A stretch of 64,000 bases of DNA from contig NC_087255.1 in NCBI RefSeq assembly GCF_037042905.1, positions 26,288,001-26,352,000 of the forward strand, written 5' to 3'. The DNA comes from Lytechinus pictus. Its lineage: Eukaryota. The number at the start of each line of letters is the position of its first letter. The first letter of the stretch is position 1. Below the pieces are notes generated by a model. That model was given only the letters and a program-made list of their open reading frames with translations. It was not told the origin of the DNA and ran no database searches. Shown in pieces: positions 9,701 to 53,471 of the stretch. A program made the translations under genes and the position numbers.

Positions 9701-12700
9701 GGTAGGCAAACTGATGTAAATCTATAACAGGGGAAACTACTGGGAGGATGAGTTTCATTATGATCCTCTCAAAACATTTCATCACTATCGATGTCAGGGC
9801 AACAGGTCGGTAGTCATTTAATTCAGACGCTTTGTTTGTTTTGGGGACTGGTATAACTTGCTTTCTTCCAACAACTAGGTAAGTCACCTTTTAGAAGCGA
9901 GTGTTCAAAGAGGTTCGCGTAGGGGATGGCTAATTGGTGAGCACAATATTTAATAATCTTTCCCGGGATATGATCTGGCCCCATTGCCTTGCGGGGGTTA
10001 ACACGGCGAAAAACGTTAATGACCTGTTGAATGCTTATTTCATGAATGTGCGGTAAGGCAGGTACCGTACGTAACACGTACATGTGACCCTTTTTATTGT
10101 GTATCTTTATCACTCTTCTTGCCCCTATCATTATGAGAGAAAATGATATCAATAGTCCGTTTTTGTATATTGCTTTGTAGGCTTCAACCATTATTACCCC
10201 AGTCATCAGATATTTGATTGCCCGCACAATATGTATGCACTTTCTCCACTTGCTTGGAATCAAACCACGTTTCATATTTTAATCATTAATCTTTCTTTAC
10301 ACAGGATGAGAGTAGCTCGTGTAGAAAGCTTTGTCGATGCATTGAAGAGACTACACTCTGATTTCAATTGGCCCCTTCCTGTCATTGGAAACCCCTTGAG
10401 TTCAAAGAGCTGTAAGTACACCTACATTCATCTCAAGTCCATACTCTCTAGAGAATTCTCTACCATGTCTATGAATGTTTTTGTAATTTGCAGAAAGGGT
10501 TGTGCTTGTGCTCTGCTTCGTACTGAACTTGATGATATAAAGATTTCTAAGATTATATTAAAAAAGATGTCATCTAAATTCTGATTCTAGACATGTATTC
10601 CTCACTGCACTCTGGTTACATACTTTTATGTCAATCAATTAATTTCACTTTTTCCCCAATTTTCTTGGTTGTAATTTATTGAAAACTCTGAAAATTGAAT
10701 GTAGTTAGATGATGAGGTCCTTTCATATTTTTTTCAAGAGCAATTCTATGAAAATTCTAAAAAAGGAAGGAAATGTAATAAAACTTCTTTTTGTCCATTT
10801 AAACATCAGTTTCACTGTATGTTTCTTAGTGATTTTAGTGGGGGGATGCTTGTTAATCACATCAGTGTGTGAACTTAGACAGATAATGTGGAGACATTTT
10901 ATAAAAACTGAAATACAGGTGATTACTAAAGCAGGTTTGACTGTATTTGATCTTATCTCTCTGTTTCTTTACAGTGCAAAGGACATCCACTCCAACGGGT
11001 ACCCTCAACGGGATGCACCCCCATACGGAGTCCCCGACCTCCCCTGTGGACCTTATCCCCACCACCAAGTTTGCAGGTATCGGCAGTATACCCCCTAAGC
11101 CTGCCACGCCCACCCCCATAGGAAACAGACCAATCAACGGTAATCACCCTGCTGGTGGGCTAACCCTCAAGTTCTCCAGGACTCAGAGCATGCTGTCTGA
11201 AAGCACTGGCAGTGATACGAGGACCGAGGAGGCTGTCCTTAAACACCCGTCGGCAAAAGGTAAATCTTCTAGATGTATTTGAGGGTAACTGTCGCAAGTT
11301 GTTTATGTCTAATTTAGGATACAGACACAAAGCACACCATTGTTTAGTCTTGTGTAAGATAAGAAAAATATTGCATTTTAAAGCTTTGCTTGAATATTTC
11401 TGTTAATATAATATCTTTCAATATTTTATTGTATGAATTCATTTTCACCCAATAATGTAGAGCATATTTGGAAACCTTATGGAATTTGTAAAGTAATTGT
11501 TATTTTGCATGAGTTTCAGGCCTCATGATCAAAGTTAAAGGTCAATTAGGGTGAAAGAACTTTGATCATCGTGTGGTATCAAAATAAAAAAAACTCAAGC
11601 AAGGTTATGACTTTAAATTTTCAAGATAATATTGCAAGATTGCCAGAGGCATTCCACTTGTCTCTACCATGAGCATAGTATTATTAACTTCCTAGTAGCT
11701 AGATTTTCAACTACTTTGTGAGTTGAAATGACTACATTCTACAGTTGATGATTATAAGTTATACATATCATGTTGACTCCCCCCCCCCTCCTCTACCAAA
11801 TGATCTAGCTTTAAGAATCTCCTTTAACAATAAAAGGACATGATATAGTATTCTAATAACATGATCTATGTGTCCTCTAGGTTCTGATGAAACCAGTGTT
11901 GGTACAACAGAAGCCTCAGAGGGAAGCCTCCTGGGAGAAGGAGACAACAATCTTGATGATAGCTTCTGGTCAAACAACGTCACAGTAGATGAACTAGAAC
12001 AGTTCTTCAAGGAAGTCATTTGGCATGGACCAAAACAATCAGAGAGAGAACTCAGGTAATTGCATTTCCATATTGGTCTGAACCTGGTAGCATTAGGGCT
12101 GTTCCTGTTACCAAGGTGGCAGCTCTTCATTTCGATTTCAAAGCTGATATTTCACACAACTATGTTGTGTCTATAACAACTGTAGGCTTACATGATTTTT
12201 ATAGACATTTACTATTTTTGATGAGGTAAAGAATTAAAAGTCGCTTTGTCCATGTAAGCATAGTCTGATATTGTCCACAACACTGAATTCTTGGAGGACA
12301 AGTGAAATGTTTAAATTGGGTCTATGATAATTCTTATTAATCAGGACCCATTTAACACAAATTTTGTATTCATCATTGATTGCACATCATTATGAATGCA
12401 ATAATTTATGAAAATTGGTCTTGTTACCAATTTTTGAGCTTTGCATTATTGGACCTGGGCTGTGAAGGTGAGGTAAATGTGAGGTTGAATTAATTCAATA
12501 TTACTATCCAGAACCCTGGTGATACCAGCTAGCAGGACATTCATCCAGCAAATTACATTTATTGGATCACTTTTATTGCAGGTATCTTTTGAAGATAGTA
12601 TTAGAAGCTAGCTGTCTGGAGTGGGGCCTCCTCATCTCCATCATCCTCAGGGACAGAGCAGCGTTGAGTCAAGTGGTGAACATAGCTAGCCTTGGGGAAA

Positions 12701-13442
12701 TCCCCATGGATGTCATTGCTAGGATGAGGGAAGGTCTTTCCTTCCTGGAGCTCTGGGCTGATTCGGAATGGTGAGACAATTTTTCTTCCAACTCTACCAG
12801 TTTATATTCTTACCCACCTCTGCCGCCTTTTTCCTTGTAAAATGAGAACTGTTAATTCTTATGCACTGCCAATTTTTTTTTGAGGGGGGCAGCACTGTTT
12901 GTGTGCTCCAAATTTGCCCTTCTCTTCTTCAAACCCTAAGCAGTTACATAGATCCCTGGCTTTTCCACCTATTAATATTATATAAATGATAACTGTCATG
13001 AACTGCTGTCTAGGAGGTCCTATTTTAAACAGGTTCCCCAATGCCCAACCCCCCCCCCAAAACAAAAACAAAAAAAGGGGGAGGATAAAGGTCATCAGAT
13101 TGTGACCCTGGATATTGTTTTCCCTCTGCATGTCTTCAAATTGTTATTGTGATGAGTTATTTTTATATTAACAATATCTGGTGATATCCCCTTTTCAGCC
13201 CTGGTTACAAGCCCCTCCTCATGGCAATGAAGCCCCAAGCCAGCGTCCTAGCTGAGGTAGTAGAGAGGGCACCATCACCAACCCGGTCAAGGTCCTCATC
13301 TGCCTCGGAACACTCCCTGAATGAGTCCAAGAAGCACAGTTCAAGGGGAAGCATGGGAGAACCTGAGCCATGCGATGACGAGGTCTTTGAAGAAGTGGAG
13401 GAAGAGGAAGAGAAGGAGGAGTCGGCGTGTGTTATATCATGA
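799..13442 (+). CDS. RIC1: RIC1 (RAB6A GEF complex partner 1), 3' part: 17 coding exons, ~875 aa in window; 5' exons lie upstream of the window
   Basis: GT-AG exons 799-964, 1428-1535, 2456-2604, 2982-3110, 3654-3753, 4389-4516, 5002-5048, 5333-5457, 6103-6245, 6789-6875, 7395-7663, 7877-8053, 10305-10411, 10975-11259, 11881-12055, 12582-12770, 13199-13442 join in one frame (2628 nt). They give RIC1 signatures [110 protein letters not shown] and [13 protein letters not shown]. The protein ends ...EESACVIS*. Confidence 0.95.
1550..1831. mobile_element. MITE remnant (GGGCCCCGTCTTACAAAGAG-type termini)
   Basis: Imperfect inverted repeats TCTTAGAAAGAGTTGTGATCGATCCGATCAATC / GATTGATTGGATCAATTGTAACTCTTTGTAAGACGGGGCCCTGG. 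Confidence 0.55.
8454..10080 (-). mobile_element. 5'-truncated non-LTR retrotransposon (Rex1/Babar-like), antisense in a RIC1 intron
   Basis: RT ORF 8658-9887 has [41 protein letters not shown] and FKYLG. The upstream part ([10 protein letters not shown]...PSCWKKA) is in another frame, implying one frameshift near 9855. It has a 3' microsatellite tail (GAATCT)n at ~8454-8480 and no endonuclease domain. Confidence 0.9.
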
Positions 13443-16104
13443 CCCAGGCATGGATGAAGGGAATGGAAGTTGGGAGATAAAGCCATTCCAGAGACAGATC
13501 CTCAGGATGTGAAAAGCGATGTATTCATCACAGGTTTGAAGAGAATGCATATTCAGGGTATGCACAAGCTTGTCAGAGGGACTTCCATCAAGACTTGCAC
13601 AGCTTATTTTTCTGCAGGAAAATATGTGAATGGGACTAAACCAAGATTTTGAGGTTTTCTCCTGTATTTCATAAATTTTTAAGAAAGTGATGACTTTGAA
13701 GAGGCGTATCTTCAATGCCTATTTTCAGGGAAAGACTCAAGCTTGCGGTAGTCAGGCGTTTGAACACGTCTTTCAGTGTTGGTGAAAGACATCGTTCGCG
13801 GGGATAGAGTGTTACAGGATAAGATGTGAGGTTTGACGGCAACAGTAACTCATCTCGAATCTCCATTGTGTCTTTGACAAAATTCTTATATCGGAGGAGA
13901 AAACTTGAATTGCTACTGTGAAAGAAACGGCTCTTCAATTGTCAGATAGCTGTGTAGATCTGTTTAATCACAATGGAGGAGATATGGAAACCACAACTCA
14001 GTGTAGGTTCATATCGAGTATTACAAAGATGGCTGTATCATGATAATGCAAAGGACCAAATTTATGCAGACAATTAGGAGCAAACTTCCGTTTTCCATTG
14101 TGTGAAAATCATATTTGATATTGTGCTGTTGAGGACTGGTGGGTTATTTATTTGAAATTACATATACTTAAAATACTATAGTGGCATTATTTTATTCATT
14201 GAATGTATTTCCACTTCCTGTAGAGAGTCATCTTATTTTTGGATGTATATGACAATGCTTTTCCTAGAATTAATTCATTATCAGTCTTACAATTGCATAA
14301 GAAACAGATGTTTTGAAGAATAGAGAAAAGTCAGATACATTAACCTGTTGGAGACTAAGTCCCGATATATGCAGTCTGGAGTCTGTGGAATGTGTTATTG
14401 TGAAATCATTCAGTCTCCAAAAGGTTAAAGCATTAGGAATTAAATCATAAAATCTCTTGAACTATTACATTTTAGGGCTGAAATCACATCGCTCTTTAGA
14501 AAAATATGAATAGGATCAAACAAATACTCTTTTTCAGGGTTTGCTCCAATTTCTCATCAATTTCAGAGAATGTGATATCCTTAAGAGGCAAATTTTCAAA
14601 AGAAATTTGCTTTGCACAGATTCAATGTGAAAATTCAAACAATTATGTTTAACCCCCTTCTATAACTTCACTGTGATGTGGTAGGTTTATTGTTTAGAAG
14701 TGAGGCGTTGAACTTGCAAGGAGCACCTGGGTTCCGCAACACAAAGCTTAGCAATTGATTACAAAACAACTTTTAAACAGTTGATTGCATTGACCACAAC
14801 CAGTGGTACAGTAATTCATTTAGTTTTGCACTACAGGGCTGAGGTAAAGATTGTGTGATTGCAGCTTGCCAGTATTTTAATTATAAGTTTCCTAGCACTG
14901 TAGCACAAAAATCTCATCGAGTTCTTTACAAAAATGACCATATTCGATGTGAGTAGTTGAAAGGACAATAAGTGGGATGTTCTGGGTGTAGTATTCTGTT
15001 TACCTTTATTACCTATGATTTAGGAATCTTCATTTTGACCATCCTGAACTCTTGTTTGGATATGATATTATGATTTTCCTATTTTTATCAATAATTTACT
15101 ACACCCAGATTCCTACAGGCAGTGCAGTGTCTTTCATATGTTTAAGCAGATTAATACATATTTTCAGTGAGAAACCGGCAGTCTGGTGTAGGCAAATTTG
15201 TCCCGGGGGGGGGGGGGGATGTGAAGCAGCATATTTTTGTATGCCTTTATACTCTCAAACTTGCCCTACCCTACCCTCCCTCTGCAAGTAGGTTGATCAA
15301 TCTTCCCTCTTTCCTTGGATATCTAATCATACCATAGATGATGTGTCTTATCAGCTTTTCTCATGAAACATCACCAAAAATTTGACCAAATTATTATTGT
15401 TTATAATACTATTTCTCGTCGGGAATCCACCAATTTGCATCGTTATTCAGGGTGACAATAAAACAATAGAGAGACTTTTTTGTGTAGAACATCTCTCTAT
15501 CCTATACAGGGTATTCTAATTCATCAAGGGTATTTGCAAAGGGTCTGTCTATCTGCCTTTGTTTATTGTCTTCATTGTAGTTAATGTTGTCTTCATATAT
15601 TGCCTGAAGCACCCATTGTGGTTTATTAGGAATAACGTGCAAATGATGCCCTTATTCTTGTAATATACATGTATGAGGAATGTCCACCCAGATGACCAAA
15701 TTCATATTGTCTTCATGTTCATTCAAGTGCATTAGATGTGGTTTTCTAAATGGAGTTTGAACGTAAGATGTAGTTTAAAATCTGTCAGTTTTCATTATGG
15801 GTGGTAATAGTCGGTTTGCATTCTTTGTTTATTTTCCTTATTATTATGTAATCGCTGTTCCTCATGTAACTTGTAAAGGTTTCCATGGCGAAGAAGAAGA
15901 GTGTTGTGATTTCATGGTTCACCATGTATTCTTTTGTGGACATTGTTGGTCCTGAAAAGGACCACCCAGCCTGAATGTTAGGTGGTTTGGGTGGTCCATA
16001 TCAGGACCAACATCTGCCCACGAAAGCATACAACTACACTCTGCTGTTCCTCATGCTTTGCAAAAAAAACTCAGTCGGTTGTCATGGGCAATTTCATACC
16101 ACTC

Positions 16105-20685: not shown

Positions 20686-23600
20686 ATGTTTTACGGAATA
20701 ACCATCTTTGTTCTGAATTTCATACAAATCGGTAAGCCCTACATGATATACATTCACATTCATTAATGTGATTTAAAACGATGAATGCATTCGTAATTCA
20801 AATTGTAATAGTGATATATATCATGTGCAATCCATTTCTATTTGATATTAAGTGAATGAATAAAGCAGAACTTACACTCTGAATAAACTTCTCCTCAAAT
20901 TTGAATACAAACTTGGACTTTAAAGTTACTTGAGAAAAAAATAAGTGTCTTTTACTGTAAACGAATATAGTATTTTTCAAAAACAAAAATTTAACTTAGT
21001 GGCCCTTTATTTTCAATATAGATTGTGGCCCTATGATCGAGTATCCACTGTTTGAGATAGATTGCATTTAGAAAGAAGGTTCAGTGATCTATCATGTCTT
21101 CTGTAAATGTGGATACTTTTTTAATGACATGATCGACGCGTAAAACATATGTAGAGACTGTTATTAAGCTTTAACATGCTAGACAAATGGAGATTATCGG
21201 ATCGAAAGACGATCATTATTTATCTATTTTTTATATTTTGTAAGACATCATATTCCGTTCCTCTCCATCTCTCTGTTTCTCCCCCCCCCCCACCCCTCTC
21301 CCTCTCTCTCTCTCCCACACGCAGTATCTAGCCAGCCATCGGCCGACCAATGGCATATTTTTGAAGATGCCCTATATCTTGTGGATAACGACACACGATT
21401 AAATTATGACCAGGCACAGTCGTACTGCCAAGAACTCGGAGGCAATCTCGCCCGGATAGATTCCGATGAGATACAGGTAATCTCTATGAAATTTGAAACT
21501 GGAAATGATTTGAAGGGACGTCATTTTTTTTCTCAATAAAAAAGGAGTATATCGTAGCAGTCGTACAAACAGAGATATATACATTACTCCTATTTCATGC
21601 AATTTCTTCTCCCGATGTCATTTTTTTCTGGATGGGGGGGGGGGTGCTTAAATAACCATAGTGGTTGATTAAATTAAGATGGTGCACTTTCCTCTTTTCT
21701 CATATTATAGGTAAACTTGATAATATCGTTTTCCATACAAGTGTTAAAAATACATATTAATTATAATCTAACCACTCGTGGACCCATCCTATAATGAACA
21801 TGTAATTCCTGACCAATCCGTCTGCTTTAAGATTAAAGCATCGTCTATGTTTTTAGTTAAAGTTTCAATCGCGTAATAATATAATAGTATAAAAGTCTTT
21901 CAAAGCGTGTTTTAAGTATTTGATATGTTTTTCATTTCTTCCCCATACAGTCTTTCTTGACAGATATCGTTAGTCCAGGTTTCGTACCAACACGATGTTT
22001 CTTTATTGGTGCTAACGACATAGAAGACGAAGATGAATTTAAGTGGCAAGACGGGACCCAAGTCCGGTAAGACATCATGACGTCAAAGCAAGTTCAGAGT
22101 CGAGTCCATCTTTGTGAATCACAAATCGAATCCGTCTCGGACTCAACCTGTGGGTTGAATCATGGATCCTATACTAATGGGATCCATGGTTAAATCAACG
22201 GATTAATCCATGCATTTTGCAAAATGAATTCCGGCCATTGTGGTCTAATGTTTTAGAATCACCTCTGACTCAACCGTGGGTTAAATCATGGGTCGTACTA
22301 ATTATTGGGATCCATGGTTAAATCAACGGATTAATCCATGCATTTTGCAAAATGAATTCCGGCCATTGTGGTCTAATGTTTTAGAATCACCTCTGACTCA
22401 ACCGTGGGTTAAATCATGGGTCGTACTAATTATTGGGATCCATGGTTAAATCAACGGATTAATCCATGCATTTTGCAAAATGAATTCCGGCCATTGTGGT
22501 CTAATGTTTTAGAATCACCTCTGACTCAACCGTGGGTTAAATCATGTGTCGTACTAATTATTGGGATCCATGGTTAAATCAACGGATTAATCCATGCATT
22601 TTGCAAAATGAATTCCGGCCATTGTGGTCTAATGTTTTAGAATCACCTCTGACTCAACCGTGGGTTAAATCATGGGTCGTACTAATTATTGGGATCCATG
22701 GTTAAATCAACGGATTAATCCATGCATTTTGCAAAATGAATTCCAGCCATTGTGGTCTAAATGTTTTAGAATCACCTCTGACTCAACCGTGGGTTAAATC
22801 ATGGGTCGTACTAATTATTGGGATCCATGGTTAAATCAACGGATTAATCCATGCATTTTGCAAAATGAATTCCAGCCATTGTGGTCTAAATGTTTTAGAA
22901 TCACCTCTGACTCAACCGTGGGTTAAATCATGGGTCGTACTAATTATTGGGATCCATGGTTAAATCAACGGATTAATCCATGCATTTTGCAAAATGAATT
23001 CCAGCCATTGTGGTCTAAATGTTTTAGAATCACCTCTGACTCAACCGTGGGTTAAATCATGGGTCGTACTAATTATTGGGATCCATGGTTAAATCAACGG
23101 ATTAATCCATGCATTTTGCAAAATGAATTCCAGCCATTGTGGTCTAATGTTTTAGAATCACCTCTGACTCAACCGTGGGTTAAATCATGGGTCGTACTAA
23201 TTATTGGGATCCATGGTTAAATCAACGGATTAATCCATGCATTTTGCAAAATGAATTCCAGCCATTGTGGTCTAAATGTTTTAGAATCACCTCTGAGATA
23301 CTTGAAAAATAATTACATAGTATTATGATAATATTTTAGATTCAGAAGATTTGGCAGGGGCGGTCAGTGGGTGATTTCAAGTCGGTGTTGGTGTTGGAAG
23401 CACAATGTGGATAATCCATATAACACAAAATTTACTTTTCAGGACCATCTTCACTTTGTGTTTGGTGTTATTTTCGTGTAAATATTGACCTAACACCAAC
23501 ATCAACACTGGTTTCAAAATCAACCATCGGTTGATGATTTTCCAAAGACAGAAAAAAGGGGGACGAAGGAAAAACGAAATTTGAGGAGCCAGATTCGATA

Positions 23601-26600
23601 TGTTTGATTGTTTGTTGGTTAAATTTTAAGCACCTTTCATTGGGAACGCAAACAATTTTGTCTGTAGGTAATAGTCAAAATACCATATCGCCACCTTTAT
23701 CAAATTTGTTTATTTCTGGAAAATTCCAAAGGAATTGTACAACAAAATAGAATCGATGACCTGTAACAATATGATTATACAACGGTTGGATAGCCCCATT
23801 TCAGAGCAATTGACTCAAATGGTCATGTTTTCTATTACTTTAGCTCGGTGGTTGGTTCCGAGGTCACTGGCGGAAATTCAAAACAATTCCTGAGATCCCA
23901 AAATTCATCGAAAAATATATGTATTGTTCAATATGTATGACATTACATGGACTGAGTCTGATAGTGAATAAAACTGCAAGGATCCCCACTATCGTAGCTT
24001 GATGGAGATAATGACAATGTTATTCATGGAAATATATGAATTCTCCAAACAACCCACAAGTAAGATAAAACCACATTCCATGTAATAGGCTAATGCCCTC
24101 GCAAATCATCCAGTATTTCGACTTAAAATGGTCGTGTGTGCTGACGGTCAGAAATATTTTTTCCTTTAATTATTTAAAACTTTAATTATTATTATTATTA
24201 TTCTATTTGACTGACATTTGACTGACTCCGAGCAGAACAATATCAACTTTGTAAAATATATATTCATTTAACTCTTTATTGTTTATCAGAATTTTCGATT
24301 ATTGTGTGGAAAGGTAATTGAAAAAGCCATTAATTATACTCTCCCTAAATACCTTATCATAACATATTTACTATCTTCTCTCGATTATATGTTCATTTTA
24401 TGATTAGATATGATGGATGGTCACCTGGGCAGCCTGACGACACAGAAGGGAACCGAGATTGCGCCTGTCTATGGTCCTCCAAAAATCCCAGTAGACATGG
24501 GCAATGGGATGACACCAACTGCTTTAATCGTATGAACTTCATATGTCAGAAGAGACTGTGTGAGTCAAGTCTTTTCTAACCTATGGGTTAGGGTTGGGCG
24601 CGTACGTGTGGGTGTGTGTGAGTGAGGATGTGCGTATGTGTGCGTTCTTATGTGTAGAAGGTGCGTGTGGGTGTTGCTGGGTGTGTGTAGTGGTGAAGGC
24701 ATGTGAATTTGTGGGCGTGTGGGTGATGGTCGGTATGTAGTGGTGAATGGGTGTGTGATGTGTATAGGTAGGTGGGTGAGGGTGGATGTGTGTGGGGGAC
24801 TGTTGATATACGATTGGGGTTTCATATATTGTCGAAGCTTAGTATTGGTTATGATTTGAATTGTTTTTATTTGATGTGTTCCACCTTTTTCATCTTGCAA
24901 TAGGCTAGTCAATTTTACATCAAAGGTTTATTACTAAGGATTATCCTTTGCTACAGATAATTTTACACTGACGAGTTCTCGGAGCAATCCAGGATCGGGC
25001 TATGTTACCTGCGCTGTCGACATCGTAGACGACAACGAAATCCTGCCACCCGATGATATCAGATTGTCAGTTGGAAAAACTTTGGCATCGACGAGATCGA
25101 TTCCTTACTCATCGACGCGCGTCATTGGTCAATTTCGTGACAGTACGTTTGAAATAGACAATCTCGAAGAAGACGACATGATATTCTGTCATGTTGGGGA
25201 CTTGTCAAGGAACACGACATCATTCTCAAGAATTCAATTTCTTCCGATTAATTTTTATGGTAATGACTCACTGATGTCTGATTGTAGATCGAAATGTTTA
25301 ATGAAATTGACGATGAATAGGAAATTTGTCATAACTATTTTCTTATACTCCATCCATTCAACAAATGAATAAAAAAAGAGAAGCATTTGTGACATAGAAA
25401 GGCAACATGTGTTGTAATTTCCCATACGTCATACATTTGATGATTTCGTAGATTTCATAGATTCGGAGAAAACAAGGAAATTGAAACGAAAACATTTCCC
25501 ACATCCATCCAGATAGTTTGCCTGAGAATACATACTCACTTAAACTTGATAGCTAATGCAAAAGAAGTTACATTACATGTGGCCCGATTCTTATTTGCTC
25601 CTATTGATCGTTTAAGGTCTACCGCGCCATAACGATTTAATGACTGTTCCACCCTGACAGCTCTACCCGGACTGACGTTCTCTCCAGCTGTGGACGACAT
25701 CGGTTCAACCTCCCTCACTGTCACCTGGAGCTCCTGGATACCATGTCTTGATACCGGTGAAGGGCCAGTGGTCAGTTACCTGGTCTACGTACAAACAACG
25801 GGTAAAGAATTGATAAATGCTGGTGAGGTCGACTCGGATGAGGGAGAGGGCGCACTTCATGGAACAATGGAGCTCGCTTTGACTGAATTGGAACCAGGAA
25901 CTGAATACAATATCAGTGTTTCTGCTGTCAGAGAAGGTGTTGGTGGAGAGGGACCGAGGAGTCCATTTGTGTCTGTTACGACGAGCATTGGTAGGTGAAT
26001 ATTACACTTTATTGTCTCTTTTATCCTTTTCTTACTTCGGTATTTAAAACGTCGACTAAGTCGTTGCCCGTCTGCATTGTTCAATAGAAAGATTTGACTA
26101 TTTATTCAAACAAGAGATAGTTTGATATGTTTTGGTGATTTCAAGTTGGCTTTTATTGATATCAATTATTTCTTAAATATGTTTGAACGTATCTTAGCTG
26201 AAGATCATTCTGAAGTAGGAGCTAGTAGAGTGGAGGTGACAGCAACATGAAAACAAGTAAAAAAATAATACTTTTTAAAATATCCCAAAAGCAACCTTAA
26301 AAGCAATAGAAACTAAATGTTTCCTAAAGTAACATAAACACTTGAAGAAGATCTACATGCCTTGTTGAATGATCATTTACACGATGAGACCAGGCTTTAT
26401 TGTAACAAGGAGCTAGTTAGGTACACCTAAAATAGCGTTACAAAATTAATTGAATACATTAATTTTTTGTGATTTCTATCTGATCTTTTGAAATTTCAGT
26501 AAGCGCACGTCGTTCTGCGATATTAGAAAACGGGATTCTGCCGTGGATATTCTTTGGAGTGTCATTAGCGGGAAATGTATTACTATTGGTCGTCATCATT

Positions 26601-51000: not shown

Positions 51001-52809
51001 ACTTCAGGGAATGGTCGTACGCAGCAAGGGGGAAGGGGGGGCACATTCGCGATCTGCTATTGTGAAAAACAATTTTTTTTCCCTTAACATTTCATGAAAA
51101 CTATGAAAAATTTGCAAATGTGAGATGTGCACCAAATTTTCGAGTCCTGCCCCCCCCCCCCCGGAAATATTAACTGCGTGTGGTCATGCAAAATGGCATG
51201 ACTGGAAATCCTACATTTTGAAAAGAGCATTTGACAGGGTCAGACTTTACCCCTTTTTCAACATTTTCTTTTATGGCGCCGGTGAAGTGCAAAAATATGT
51301 GCGCCGCTCGGCAGTGCGCCCCCCCCCCTTCGCCAAAAGCTGGATCCGCCTATGGTAAGGACTGTGTATTGCATTATTCCGAGTATGATGTTTCTTTCAT
51401 GTTTCAGGCAGTGCCTTTCAGGAAGACTCTCGTCGCGTTTGGATTGCTTTATTTCTGGTTTCATTTCTCGGAAATCTCATTCTTCTCGCTGTTCTTTTGA
51501 TTATATGGTAAGTATGAAAACATGACACCGGCCCACAGGGATAGAAACAAATAGAGATTTCGCTGACCTTTATTTTCTATCATATTTGTCCCTAAATTTG
51601 AAATAAAGTCTAATGCGGAAATTTACAGTAAAAAAATATTGATAAACTGCTTGTTAATACTAGAATCATGTGAATTCAATTAGAGTAAGGTTTGCATGTA
51701 GTGTTGGTGAATCTATGCTGGCCTACTTTGACGTATGCGAGCGAAGAGGCAAAGATCTAAATGGGTATGTGACAAAAAAGTGACATATCAACCGAAACAG
51801 ATTACTTTATGTGGTACAAAAAAAAATGATAACCTCTACCGGACGAAATTTGACAGAAAAATGCGAATGCTGCTATGAATGGTGGCTAATTAATCAACGT
51901 ACTAGTCGGTGTCAATGTAAATTACAAAAAATAGCTCTTTGATCGATTATCATAAGTTTTTACACTTGTTCCCTTTTGTCAACGTAGGCCAGCAGGACCA
52001 ATACTAGATGCCTTACATTTTATCATGATTCTGGTATCAAGATTGTTTAGCTATAAATTTCCGGTTGGTCTTTCACCGCTTCGTGTAGGCCTACTTTCCG
52101 TTTCGTCTCACCCCCGCAAATGGAAAATATAGTACTCCATGTTCGATCGTCTACAACCAGATCGTCTACTTACCATTTGAGTATATTGCCATAAAACCTA
52201 TTTACCTTCTTGTCCTAATTCTATTTAGGCTATACAAATTTCGTCTTACTGGTCTAACACAACATGTATATAATTATGGTTATATAAACTCTTTATGAAC
52301 CAAATTTTCAGATAAATTAAGAAATATAATTTCAGCTAAATGAGGCAAAAGGTGGGCATATTTCATATCAACTTCCGTTGCATTTCAAGTAATCACTCCA
52401 CAATTATTTACAGATTTTTTTAAAATAGATATTTCTTTAATATTTCCATGTATTTCTGTTATCATGGGATTCTGCCCCATCCTTCAAACTTACAGTATAC
52501 TATTAAAAGAAAATCATCCCGATTCTTTTTACAAACAGCAAGTGGAAGCAGAAGAAGCAGGACCTGTCTCACTTACGTGCTGCCCCAATAAGAGCAGGGG
52601 GAGGAGGAGCAAGAGGAAGCGACCCAAAGAGCTCCCATTACGAGCTACCTCAACAAAGTGGAGTCAGGCACGAATACCAGGGTCTTAAGGTGACTGGGAG
52701 CAGCGCTGATGAATACCAATGTCTTAAGATGACTGGAAGAAGCGCTGATGAGCAGGTATACGCCGACATCGAAGATCCAGAAAAAAACTACATCAATATC
52801 CCTTCTTAA
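43818..52809 (+). CDS. Receptor B: paralog of receptor A (C-type lectin + Ig-like + FN3 + TM + ITAM-bearing tail), exons 2-8 (~500 aa with candidate exon 1)
   Basis: Exons: 43818-43969, 44448-44563, 45383-45534 (WAPSQPDN..DCACLW..GQWDDDRC..NFICQ), 46620-46925 (Ig-like), 47698-48033 (FN3, LTGLDPGTEYNISVSAVREG), 51408-51507 (TM VWIALFLVSFLGNLILLAVLLII), 52539-52809 (tail ending VYADIEDPEKNYINIPS*). Intron phases match receptor A, and the three CTL exons have the same sizes (152/116/152). Confidence 0.87.
44971..45050. repeat. (ACT)n/(GCT)n microsatellite
   Basis: Read directly from the sequence. Confidence 0.9.
45793..45955. mobile_element. MITE with GGGGGGCGTTTCAT termini, CTG target duplication
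   Basis: CCTGGGGGGCGTTTCATCAA ... TTTCATGAAACGCCCCCCTGG. Confidence 0.8.
46367..46590. mobile_element. CACTG-ended (EnSpm/CACTA-like) MITE
   Basis: Ends CACAGTAAAAAAC / GTTTTTACAGTG, with an internal inverted pair TAAGCCAACCACTC.AAC / GTTGGAGTGACTGGCTTA around TTTAAAC repeats. Confidence 0.55.
47313..47556. mobile_element. hAT-type MITE with perfect 8-bp TSD
   Basis: TTTAGTGG|CAGGGGCGGAAATC ... GATTTCTGCCCATG|TTTAGTGG. Confidence 0.85.
48830..49670. repeat. Complex minisatellite built from ~17-20 bp AATC(G/A)GCGCC units
   Basis: Recurrent AAGAATAATCAGCGCC / ATCTGGTTATAAATCGGCGCC / ACCTAAATCTAAATCGGCGCC / GAGTCTTAACCGGCGCC blocks. Confidence 0.9.
50090..50751 (-). mobile_element. Partial inverted copy of the 27495-29211 element
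   Basis: Reverse complement of 27495-27600 plus 28470-29000, ending GGATCGACGCCCCTA. It lacks the nested foldback MITE at its (TA)n site. Confidence 0.75.
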
Positions 52810-52859
52810 AGACATCGGATACCATTTTACTACTAATAAAAATAACAATGAAATTCCGA

Positions 52860-53199
52860 TTTCATATAGCGGTTATACATCGGAGCGGCATCTCTAAGCG
52901 CTTTATAGATACTGTACTATTACCCCGGTCATCGGATCCTGGCATACCCGCACTTTCTTGACTCCATGGTCATGCTCGTGAGCATTGGGATTTCAAAAAT
53001 CGTTTTTATTTTCAATTTCTATGCAATACTACATAGGCTTTTGCATCCTACCGTATATCTCTTTAACAGCTGGATGGAGAGCGACATAGTTTGGGTCGAT
53101 GCCTTGCCAAAGGACGCTAGGCCGCGGTGGGATTCGAACACTTGGCCATCTGATAACAAGGCGAGAGTCATGCAGAACCTGCTACACCACGACGCTTCC
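52860..53199 (-). mobile_element. tRNA-derived SINE just downstream of the receptor B stop codon
   Basis: The minus strand begins GGAAGCGTCGTGGTGTAG (A-box-like), has GTTCGAATCCC (B-box), and ends AAAGCGCTTAGAGATG...CGCTATATGAAA. Confidence 0.6.
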
Positions 53200-53471
53200 G
53201 TTATAAAGGCCTTAAATCCAGAACCTTGAAGTGTGTTGTATTTAATATAGGTGGTATGGATAACAAAAGGACCATGGAAGAAGAAATGTCGTGAAGACAC
53301 TTTCAAGACAGCAGATCTCGGGAAAAATCAGTAAAATGAAAAGAACATTTCGAATGAAAATACCTGTGACTGAAAAAAAAAATAATGTGATTCATTTACT
53401 GGGGAGTAACAAATACATTTTATGGAATAAAGTTGGGAATGGTGTTTCCACTCACTTCATGTTTTACTTCT

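What the first reader, a model, noticed from the sequence alone, without database searches (positions are those of the whole stretch)
52539..52809. Receptor B tail: canonical ITAM at the C-terminus plus three further tyrosine motifs
The in-frame translation is CKWKQKKQDLSHLRAAPIRAGGGGARGSDPKSSHYELPQQSGVRHEYQGLKVTGSSADEYQCLKMTGRSADEQVYADIEDPEKNYINIPS*. E-x2-YADI-x6-YINI fits the ITAM consensus (D/E-x2-YxxI/L-x6-8-YxxI/L). EYQGL recalls the CD3zeta LYQGL half-site, DEYQCL is hemITAM-like, and YINI is also a YxN Grb2-type site. The ORF track reports only a different frame here (52464-52688).
Basis: partly seen in the sequence, partly recalled or inferred. Interest (0 to 1): 0.82.

Follow-up and report, generated by a model that had tools for sequence, protein, structure and literature searches.

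The report
Sea urchin lectin receptor ITAM-like tail
This stretch is the last coding exon of an expressed but unstudied painted sea urchin (Lytechinus pictus) surface lectin receptor, and its inner tail carries conserved tyrosine docking sites, the last two arranged like the activation motif (ITAM) of vertebrate immune receptors.

Summary
Window 52539-52809 (+) is exon 8, the last coding exon, of Lytechinus pictus LOC129271086 (XP_063962303.1, 500 aa, 'uncharacterized'). It encodes residues 411-500, the cytoplasmic tail.

- **Protein:** signal peptide, C-type lectin domain, Ig-like domain, FN3, transmembrane helix, tail.
- **Motif:** E-x2-YADI-x6-YINI fits the strict ITAM pattern. Only 0.5% of shuffles of the tail give it.
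- **Orthologues:** L. variegatus keeps it, with one conservative change in the spacer. One S. purpuratus tail keeps it as YDDI-x7-YVNI.
- **Tyrosines:** in 11 aligned tails, three of the four invariant columns are tyrosines.
- **Reader protein:** a Syk/ZAP-70 orthologue is present in the genome.

Receptor A and most S. purpuratus paralogues have T, M or S at +3 of one or both distal tyrosines. What the family keeps is YE[LV]P, YxGL, Yxx[I/T/M] and YVNx. 'DEYQCL' comes from a Lytechinus-specific 39-bp duplication, and its Cys reads Gly in all four RNA data sets laid and in L. variegatus.

Binding to Syk is inferred, not shown. The closest described cases are the oyster transmembrane C-type lectins that signal through Syk. 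The scan had noted this stretch before (s1-317520, s1-317709).

The parts
38639..38708 (+). Exon 1: ATG and signal peptide (residues 1-23 plus the first base of codon 24)
   Evidence: Exact match of P0021 residues 1-22 at 38639 onward. The bases after 38708 are not GT by eye, so this donor is unverified.
43818..43969 (+). Exon 2: first part of the C-type lectin domain
   Evidence: P0021 residues 24-74 map here, with acceptor cag| and donor gtatgt. Weak Lectin_C match on the exon alone.
44448..44563 (+). Exon 3: middle part of the C-type lectin domain
   Evidence: P0021 residues 75-113.
45383..45534 (+). Exon 4: last part of the C-type lectin domain, with QPD and WDD in place of EPN/QPD and WND
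   Evidence: P0021 residues 114-163. Lectin_C E 2e-7 on the exon and E 7e-19 on the whole protein, residues 49-161.
46620..46925 (+). Exon 5: Ig-like beta-sandwich domain with two invariant cysteines
   Evidence: P0021 residues 164-265. No Pfam match. Alignment A2 has invariant C23 and C82. AlphaFold model pLDDT 76, all-beta. Best PDB matches are Ig-fold domains of MHC class II, ICAM-1 and neuroplastin, TM about 0.5.
47698..48033 (+). Exon 6: fibronectin type III domain (phase 1-1 exon)
   Evidence: Pfam fn3 E 2e-9. Boundaries ag| and |gtaagt. Covered by spliced contig X1 record 1.
51408..51507 (+). Exon 7: short stalk and transmembrane helix (residues 388-410, with a conserved Gly-Asn at 51470-51475); ends with 'tg' of the split Cys411 codon
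   Evidence: Sequence with ag| and |gtaagt. Covered by spliced contig X1 record 1. P0021 residues 378-410.
52539..52809 (+). Exon 8, coding part: cytoplasmic tail residues 411-500 plus stop TAA 52807-52809 (the finding)
52639..52650 (+). Tyr445 motif YELP (YE[LV]P in 10 of 11 aligned tails)
   Evidence: Alignment A3: Y35 and E36 invariant, P38 in at least 90%.
52675..52686 (+). Tyr457 motif YQGL (YxGL or YxDL in the family)
   Evidence: A3: Y47 invariant, L50 and H45 in at least 90%.
52672..52749 (+). 39-bp tandem duplication (13 codons x 2) that adds Tyr470 (YQCL, 52714-52725); 52720 is T in the reference and G in RNA
   Evidence: 34/39 identical. Present in L. variegatus with Gly and absent from all S. 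purpuratus tails. 52720 T>G in runs X1, X19, X20 and X5.
52750..52800 (+). ITAM-like module: E482-x2-Y485ADI-x6-Y495INI. The last Tyr is also a YxN site.
52810..53207 (+). 3' untranslated region (at least to 53207), overlapping a repeat that is highly covered in RNA runs, mostly in the opposite first-mate orientation
   Evidence: X1 contig record 1 runs to 53207. Depth is in the hundreds at 52819-53212 with first mate on +. No Rfam match.

Best explanation
Window 52539-52809 encodes the cytoplasmic tail (residues 411-500) of a type I membrane receptor of the painted sea urchin, LOC129271086. Its ectodomain is a C-type lectin domain, an Ig-like domain and an FN3 domain.

The tail is a low-complexity phosphotyrosine docking region. 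Four tyrosines are conserved across the echinoid family and a fifth was added by a Lytechinus-specific duplication.

Proposed mechanism:
1. Ligand binding clusters the receptor.
2. A Src-family kinase phosphorylates the tail.
3. The doubly phosphorylated distal pair (YADI-x6-YINI) is read by the tandem SH2 domains of the sea urchin Syk/ZAP-70 orthologue, as a cis-ITAM.
4. The last tyrosine (YxN) and the first (YExP) can also take Grb2-type and Crk/Nck-type SH2 adaptors.

Shown here: the exon, splice, frame, transcription, membrane topology by domain order, motif pattern, conservation, and presence of Syk.

Inferred: phosphorylation, Syk binding, an activating output and an immune role.

My odds are about 0.95 that this is the expressed tail of this receptor, about 0.8 that the conserved tyrosines are functional SH2-docking sites, and about 0.4 that the distal pair works as a true Syk-recruiting ITAM.
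For: - Splice and frame come from a spliced contig and stranded raw reads and are identical to RefSeq model P0021.
- Domains: Lectin_C E 7e-19 and fn3 E 4e-8 on P0021; Ig-like fold for exon 5; a hydrophobic 23-residue helix followed by CKWKQKK.
- The motif is rare by chance: 0.5% of shuffles, or 0.07% with the acidic residue at -3.
- Conservation: L. variegatus keeps all five Tyr and the YADI-x6-YINI spacing. The S. purpuratus tail is only 47% identical, but the identical blocks sit on the tyrosines, and YDDI-x7-YVNI fits ITAM.
- In 11 tails, three of the four invariant columns are Tyr, the fourth Tyr is in at least 90%, and E at -3 of the third Tyr is in at least 90%.
- Syk/ZAP-70 orthologue at G000:C11:2018395-2046730 (-). 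The N-SH2 exon matches ZAP-70/SYK at E 4e-38, against 3e-13 for the next family. The C-SH2 exon matches only SYK/ZAP-70, E 3e-15. Kinase exons lie downstream.
- Precedent: oyster transmembrane C-type lectins CgCLec-TM1 and CgCLec-HTM associate with Syk through hemITAM or non-classical ITAM tails (PMC13027682). Syk orthologues of S. purpuratus and L. variegatus are listed in PMC13344425.
Against: - L/I at +3 of both distal tyrosines is found only in the two Lytechinus orthologues and in one S. purpuratus tail. That tail appears in three protein models (P0003, P0005, P0018).
- Receptor A and the other S. purpuratus paralogue tails have T, M or S there. Selection in the family therefore seems to act on the tyrosines, on N at +2 of the last one and on P at +3 of the first, rather than on an ITAM as such.
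- A 6-residue spacer is the shortest allowed by the consensus.
- There are no phosphorylation, binding or cell-type data.
- RNA depth is low: 2-7 reads over the exon in about 6% of two 21-Gb runs.
- A motif match alone is weak evidence for a specific SH2 partner.
Confidence: 0.45

Rival explanations
1. The tail is a multi-adaptor docking scaffold in which each tyrosine is read singly. YE[LV]P would take Crk/Nck/Abl-type SH2 domains, YVNx would take Grb2/Drk, and YxxM variants in paralogues would take PI3K p85. The ITAM fit of the distal pair in Lytechinus would then be incidental, with no bidentate Syk engagement.
For: The best-conserved specificity residues are P at +3 of Tyr1 (10 of 11 tails) and N at +2 of Tyr4 (9 of 12 tails that have that Tyr). 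The +3 residue of Tyr3 and Tyr4 drifts among I, T, M and S. Some paralogues end in YVNM, YVDM or YVYM.
Against: The Tyr3-Tyr4 distance is held at 10-11 residues in every tail that has both. An acidic residue at -3 and the DPEK spacer are kept in the B clade. That pattern suggests the two sites are read together. Both Lytechinus species and one S. purpuratus gene keep I at both +3 positions.
Confidence: 0.3
2. The YxxL/I sites are tyrosine-based YxxPhi sorting signals read by AP-2. The protein would be an endocytic lectin that takes up glycan ligands rather than a signalling receptor.
For: YQGL, YADI and YINI all fit YxxPhi. Many type I C-type lectin receptors are endocytic (established knowledge).
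Against: Several family tails have T, S or P at +3 (YDDT, YTDT, YVNT, YVNS, YE[LV]P), which does not fit YxxPhi, yet their tyrosines are conserved. Four or five such signals in one tail is more than sorting needs.
Confidence: 0.12
3. The tail is inhibitory. ITIM- or ITSM-like sites would recruit an SHP-type phosphatase.
For: The S. purpuratus tail reads L-E-Y-V-N-I, which fits [ILVS]xYxx[ILV].
Against: In L. pictus and L. variegatus the -2 residues of the distal tyrosines are Q and K, so neither is an ITIM. The ITIM fit is not conserved.
Confidence: 0.05
4. The motifs are chance features of a fast-evolving, low-complexity tail and have no function.
For: The tail is short and low in complexity, has no Pfam match, and diverges fast: 47% identity to S. 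purpuratus and 27-37% to the A clade.
Against: Against that divergence, three of the four invariant columns are tyrosines. The arrangement is rare in shuffles.
Confidence: 0.03

Closest known systems
Oyster transmembrane C-type lectins CgCLec-TM1 and CgCLec-HTM (Crassostrea gigas)
   Same: These are invertebrate membrane receptors with a C-type lectin ectodomain and a tyrosine motif in their own tail. They are reported to associate with Syk and drive ERK and cytokine expression (review PMC13027682).
   Different: They are described with a hemITAM or 'non-classical' ITAM, not a dual Yxx[LI]-x6-8-Yxx[LI]. I did not compare sequences. No Ig-like or FN3 domains are mentioned for them. They are molluscs, not deuterostomes. 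No homology was tested here.
Receptors with an ITAM in their own tail: human FcgammaRIIA and Drosophila Draper (from established knowledge, not tested here)
   Same: These are type I receptors whose own cytoplasmic tail carries two Yxx[LI] sites read by the tandem SH2 of Syk or Shark, with no separate signalling chain.
   Different: Their ectodomains are unrelated (Ig, or EMI/EGF). Their spacers are long (11-12 residues), against 6 here. The family-wide Tyr2-Tyr3 pair (YxGL-x12-YxxI in S. purpuratus tails) resembles that long spacing more than the distal pair does.
Vertebrate myeloid C-type lectin receptors (Dectin-1 and CLEC-2 with a hemITAM; Dectin-2 and Mincle through FcRgamma)
   Same: A C-type lectin domain is coupled to Syk-type tyrosine signalling.
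   Different: Those are type II proteins with an N-terminal tail and a single YxxL after an acidic triplet, or they borrow the ITAM of FcRgamma. This one is type I, with Ig-like and FN3 domains and a C-terminal dual motif.
S. purpuratus LOC115928901 (XP_030852830.1) with LOC115928769, and L. variegatus LOC121424038 (XP_041475548.1)
   Same: These are orthologues with the same exon layout and tail motifs.
   Different: All are annotated 'uncharacterized'. The S. purpuratus gene is split into two models, lacks the 13-residue duplication, has a 7-residue spacer, and runs about 25 residues further after the last motif.

Membership tests
ITAM (immunoreceptor tyrosine-based activation motif) | Two Yxx(L/I) sites | tested here: met
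   YADI and YINI.
ITAM (immunoreceptor tyrosine-based activation motif) | Spacer of 6-8 residues between the two sites | tested here: met
   EDPEKN is 6 residues, the lower limit. The spacer is 7 in S. purpuratus.
ITAM (immunoreceptor tyrosine-based activation motif) | Lies in the cytoplasmic part of a membrane receptor or adaptor | tested here: met
   The transmembrane exon is spliced to the tail exon in RNA. The signal peptide and ectodomains lie upstream, and a basic cluster follows the helix. Topology is inferred from domain order.
ITAM (immunoreceptor tyrosine-based activation motif) | Motif, including L/I at +3, conserved in orthologues and paralogues | tested here: inconclusive
   Kept in L. 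variegatus and in one S. purpuratus tail. Not kept in Receptor A or in the other S. purpuratus paralogue tails.
ITAM (immunoreceptor tyrosine-based activation motif) | A Syk-family tandem-SH2 kinase is present in the organism | tested here: met
   G000:C11:2018395-2046730 (-). SH2 exons match SYK/ZAP-70 at E 4e-38 and 3e-15, with kinase exons downstream.
ITAM (immunoreceptor tyrosine-based activation motif) | Both tyrosines are phosphorylated and bind the tandem SH2 of Syk | not testable with these tools
   Needs biochemistry. No complex prediction was run, because no unspliced reference for the tandem SH2 was available.
hemITAM (Dectin-1 / CLEC-2 type) | A single YxxL preceded by an acidic triplet (DEDG-type) in the N-terminal tail of a type II lectin | tested here: not met
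   The context is S-A-D-E-Y-Q-C/G-L, with only two acidic residues. The tail is C-terminal and the protein is type I. The consensus is from established knowledge.
ITIM | [I/V/L/S]-x-Y-x-x-[I/V/L] | tested here: not met
   The -2 residues are S, H, D, Q and K for the five tyrosines. Ser at -2 of YELP fails because P is at +3. Only the S. purpuratus LEYVNI fits.
Grb2-type SH2 site (pYxN) | Asn at +2 of the tyrosine | tested here: met
   YINI here. N at +2 in 9 of 12 tails that have the fourth tyrosine. Binding was not tested.
C-type lectin-like domain proteins | Match to the Lectin_C profile above the curated cut-off | tested here: met
   PF00059 E 7e-19, 68.9 bits against a cut-off of 22.6, residues 49-161 of P0021.
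C-type lectin-like domain proteins | Complete Ca2+/sugar site (EPN or QPD, plus WND) | tested here: inconclusive
   QPD is present, but WDD replaces WND, and Q stands where mannose-binding protein has a Ca-ligand Glu (read from P0021; the comparison is from memory).

The most novel reading that the evidence does not exclude
The Ig-like + FN3 module of Receptors A and B is shared with three receptor-type tyrosine phosphatase genes in the same genome. The tyrosine-motif receptors and these phosphatases could recognise related ligands and act as an opposing pair. One would offer ITAM-like tyrosines to Src/Syk kinases and the other would erase them. That would be an echinoid-specific activating/inhibitory receptor system, built independently of the vertebrate ITAM/ITIM pairs.
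Probability: 0.08. Interest if true: 0.75.

Novelty: new member of a known kind. Interest (0 to 1): 0.45.

Why it matters
Syk-family kinases predate vertebrates, but few receptors that feed them are known outside vertebrates. The known cases are insect Draper and a few oyster receptors. I found no paper describing one in echinoderms.

This gene is a concrete, expressed candidate in L. pictus, a sea urchin that can be bred and gene-edited in the laboratory (established knowledge). Its dual-tyrosine motif fits the strict consensus and is kept across two genera. Peptide binding, chimeric receptors and knock-outs can test it directly.

The paralogue series, with I, T, M or S at +3, is also a natural experiment on how an ITAM-like pair arises from, or decays into, single SH2 sites.

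Tried and rejected
- **Tail against 1.84 billion cluster representatives.** The only true relative was the S. purpuratus tail, P0003. The other three hits (a SAR86 bacterial protein, a stick-insect protein and a repeat protein, P0004) matched in several short stretches and looked like repeat or low-complexity matches. I set them aside without aligning them.
- **Tail exons of B and A against the own genome.** No further copies were found.
- **Pfam on both tails.** No match.
- **Rfam on the highly covered part of the 3' UTR.** No match.
- **hemITAM and ITIM readings.** Rejected on sequence; see the membership test.
- **Organism B (run X5) as an independent orthologue.** It showed only the shared acceptor and G at 52720. 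The L. variegatus protein replaced it.
- **Complex prediction of the tail with Syk.** Not run. The tandem SH2 is split over several exons and no stored full-length protein was reachable within the length limits of the searches. A single SH2 with an unphosphorylated peptide would not separate the ITAM reading from the multi-adaptor rival.
- **Four literature searches.** No paper on this gene family was found.
Full report
**1. What is in the sequence.**

The exon upstream ends '...ata tg|gtaagt' at 51507. The finding begins with 'c' at 52539, after the acceptor '...acaaacag|'. A translation started at 52539 itself is therefore out of frame.

The true frame has no start codon inside the exon.

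**2. It is a real, transcribed exon.**

I laid four runs on 47500-53400.

- One 1564-nt contig of run X1 lies on three pieces: 47697-48032, 51407-51506 and 52538-53207. Each joint can shift one base to the right. That places the exons at 47698-48033, 51408-51507 and 52539 onward, each intron bounded by GT..AG.
- The joint 51507>52539 is also present in raw stranded RNA reads: X19, 4 reads from 3 starts; X20, 7 reads from 5 starts.
- All these reads have the first mate on the minus strand, the orientation usual for a + strand RNA in stranded libraries.
- Depth is low, 2-7 reads over the exon in about 6% of each run.
- A contig of a related species (run X5) uses the same acceptor.

**3. Which gene.**

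A search with a S. purpuratus relative returned P0021. This is XP_063962303.1, 'uncharacterized protein LOC129271086 isoform X1 [Lytechinus pictus]', 500 aa. It lies on a contig of 35,715,200 bases, the length of the window's own contig.

Mapping P0021 on the window gives eight exons:

| Exon | Window coordinates | Content |
|---|---|---|
| 1 | 38639-38708 | signal peptide |
| 2 | 43818-43969 | C-type lectin domain, part 1 |
| 3 | 44448-44563 | C-type lectin domain, part 2 |
| 4 | 45383-45534 | C-type lectin domain, part 3 |
| 5 | 46620-46925 | Ig-like domain |
| 6 | 47698-48033 | FN3 |
| 7 | 51408-51507 | stalk and transmembrane helix |
| 8 | 52539-52809 | cytoplasmic tail |

- Pfam finds Lectin_C (E 7e-19, residues 49-161) and fn3 (E 4e-8, residues 279-364).
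- Exon 5 has no Pfam match. It has two invariant cysteines about 59 residues apart and folds as an all-beta domain (pLDDT 76).
- The best PDB matches of that model are Ig-fold domains, TM about 0.5. I call it Ig-like with moderate confidence.
- The 23-residue hydrophobic helix is followed by CKWKQKK.

The protein is therefore a type I receptor, and the finding is its 90-residue cytoplasmic tail.

**4. Is the motif more than chance?**

In 200,000 shuffles of the tail:

- Yxx[LI]-x6-8-Yxx[LI] appears in 0.5%.
- The same with an acidic residue at -3 appears in 0.07%.
- All five tyrosines followed by L/I/P at +3 appears in 0.0025%.

**5. Conservation.**

- **L. variegatus.** The orthologue is LOC121424038, P0029. 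Its tail is 90% identical. It keeps all five tyrosines and the distal module as YADIEDPDKNYINI.
- **S. purpuratus.** The closest tail is in P0003 and P0005 (LOC115928901). It is only 47% identical (E 1e-18). The identical blocks sit on the tyrosines: YELPQQS, YQGLK, VYxDIxDPEK and YxNI. The distal pair reads YDDI-x7-YVNI and again fits the ITAM pattern. The S. purpuratus locus has the same exon layout, but the annotation splits it into an ectodomain gene and a TM-plus-tail gene.
- **Whole family.** In 11 tails from both clades and three species, the invariant columns are Y35, E36, Y47 and Y75. Y85, P38, H45, L50 and E72 are in at least 90%. Mean column identity is 43%.

The tyrosines are clearly under constraint.

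**6. Where the ITAM reading weakens.**

The strict pattern occurs only in the two Lytechinus orthologues and in that one S. purpuratus tail. The tail is present in three protein models.

| Tail | Distal pair |
|---|---|
| Receptor A of this window (tail 26711-26968) | YISM-x7-YVNT |
| S. purpuratus orthologues of Receptor A | YLSI-x7-YVNT |
| Other S. purpuratus B-like tails | YSDI/YVDM, YDDI/YVYM, YADI/YVNS, YTDT/YVNM |
| Two S. purpuratus models | end after YDDT |

What the family keeps is YE[LV]P, Y[QE][GD][LF], Yxx[I/T/M], and YVN[x]. The last two lie 10-11 residues apart, with an acidic residue at -3 of the third tyrosine. N at +2 of the last tyrosine is kept in 9 of 12 tails.

A second pair, YxGL-x12-YxxI, is kept in most S. 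purpuratus tails of both clades. It fits only the loose, long-spacer ITAM definition.

**7. The 'third' half-site.**

Positions 52672-52710 and 52711-52749 are a 39-bp tandem duplication, 34/39 identical. It is shared with L. variegatus and absent from every S. purpuratus tail.

At 52720 the reference has T (Cys472). All four RNA data sets laid read G (Gly), as does L. variegatus. The usual form of the site is therefore EYQGL twice, and 'DEYQCL' is not a hemITAM.

**8. The proposed partner exists.**

SH2 and tyrosine-kinase profile searches of the genome find a gene at G000:C11:2018395-2046730 (-). It has two SH2 domains followed by kinase exons.

- The first SH2 exon matches ZAP-70/SYK tandem-SH2 structures at E 4e-38. 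The next family scores 3e-13.
- The second SH2 exon matches only SYK/ZAP-70, at E 3e-15.
- A recent paper lists SYK/ZAP-70 orthologues for S. purpuratus and L. variegatus (PMC13344425).

**9. Family context.**

The Ig-like exon finds five genes in this genome. Two are Receptors A and B, in tandem in this window. Three are more distant genes whose downstream exons carry an FN3, a transmembrane helix and, in at least two of them (L004 and L006), protein-tyrosine-phosphatase domains (Y_phosphatase E 7e-10 and 2e-9). Those are receptor-type phosphatases. S. purpuratus has an expanded tandem array of B-like genes.

**10. Interpretation.**

The shown facts support an expressed type I lectin receptor whose tail is a conserved multi-tyrosine docking region. 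The best mechanistic reading is that, in Lytechinus, the distal pair serves as a cis-ITAM for Syk. My odds for that are about 0.4.

The main rival is a scaffold of singly read SH2 sites (YxxP, YxN), at about 0.3. The family-wide pattern of specificity residues favours that rival. The fixed Tyr3-Tyr4 spacing and the conserved acidic context favour a bidentate reader.

Sorting-signal, inhibitory and no-function readings are less likely, for the reasons given under the rivals.

**11. Comparison with known systems.**

The closest described cases are the oyster transmembrane C-type lectins CgCLec-TM1 and CgCLec-HTM. They are reported to associate with Syk through hemITAM or non-classical ITAM tails (PMC13027682).

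In mechanism, the closest are type I receptors with an ITAM in their own tail, FcgammaRIIA and Draper (established knowledge). Vertebrate Syk-coupled C-type lectins are type II.

Four literature searches found nothing on this echinoid family. I rate it a new member of a known kind. It is moderately interesting because it is directly testable in a tractable sea urchin. It is not a surprise in principle.

Noticed in passing
window 21321-26968 (+): Receptor A is a tandem paralogue with the same exon layout: lectin exons near 21321-21530, 21945-22091 and 24403-24573; Ig-like 24959-25240; FN3 25645-25983; TM 26502-26600; tail 26711-26968. Its tail reads YEVP, YEGL, YISM-x7-YVNT. S. purpuratus LOC100890603 is its orthologue.
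   Followed up: partly
G000:C11:29307010-29317009 (L004, -), G000:C11:12530001-12540000 (L005, +), G000:C19:8259031-8269030 (L006, +): Three genes share the Ig-like + FN3 module of Receptors A and B. Their downstream exons carry a transmembrane helix, and in L004 and L006 they match tyrosine-phosphatase domains. These are receptor-type phosphatases with a related ectodomain.
   Followed up: partly
G000:C11:26378872-26379693 (-), about 27 kb beyond the window's end: The best tyrosine-kinase profile match in the whole genome (E 4e-90) is a single uninterrupted ORF of 382 aa close to this receptor pair. Its nature (intronless kinase gene or retrocopy) was not examined.
   Followed up: no
window 51470-51475: A Gly-Asn pair sits in the middle of the transmembrane helix. 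It is kept in most family members of both clades, which suggests helix-helix association in the membrane.
   Followed up: no
window 52720: The reference has T (Cys472), but all four RNA data sets laid and the L. variegatus protein have G (Gly). This is either an allele of the sequenced individual or an assembly error.
   Followed up: yes
window 38708-38710: The donor after exon 1 of the RefSeq model is not GT by eye (the bases after 38708 read 'ga'). The 5.1-kb intron 1 holds two N runs (40786-41133, 41179-41490) and reverse-transcriptase-like open frames (42001-42644).
   Followed up: no
window 22178-23217: Intron 2 of Receptor A holds a tandem repeat with a period of about 128 bases. The same 54-codon open frame recurs at 22285, 22413, 22541 and 23056.
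   Followed up: no
window 50061-50848 and 52819-53212: These two stretches have RNA depth in the hundreds to thousands in all runs, and most reads run on into unlike sequence. They are dispersed repeats, one in intron 7 and one in the 3' UTR. The 3' UTR stretch (52700-53400) has no Rfam match; the intron 7 stretch was not searched.
   Followed up: partly
L003 1-10876 (S. purpuratus AAGJ06000003.1): The S. purpuratus annotation splits the orthologous receptor into two gene models: a 382-aa ectodomain and a 139-aa TM plus tail. Another lectin paralogue starts about 9 kb downstream.
   Followed up: partly
window 10900-13450 (+): Long open stretches of an unrelated upstream gene, Ser/Pro-rich with an acidic C-terminal stretch, were not identified.
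   Followed up: no
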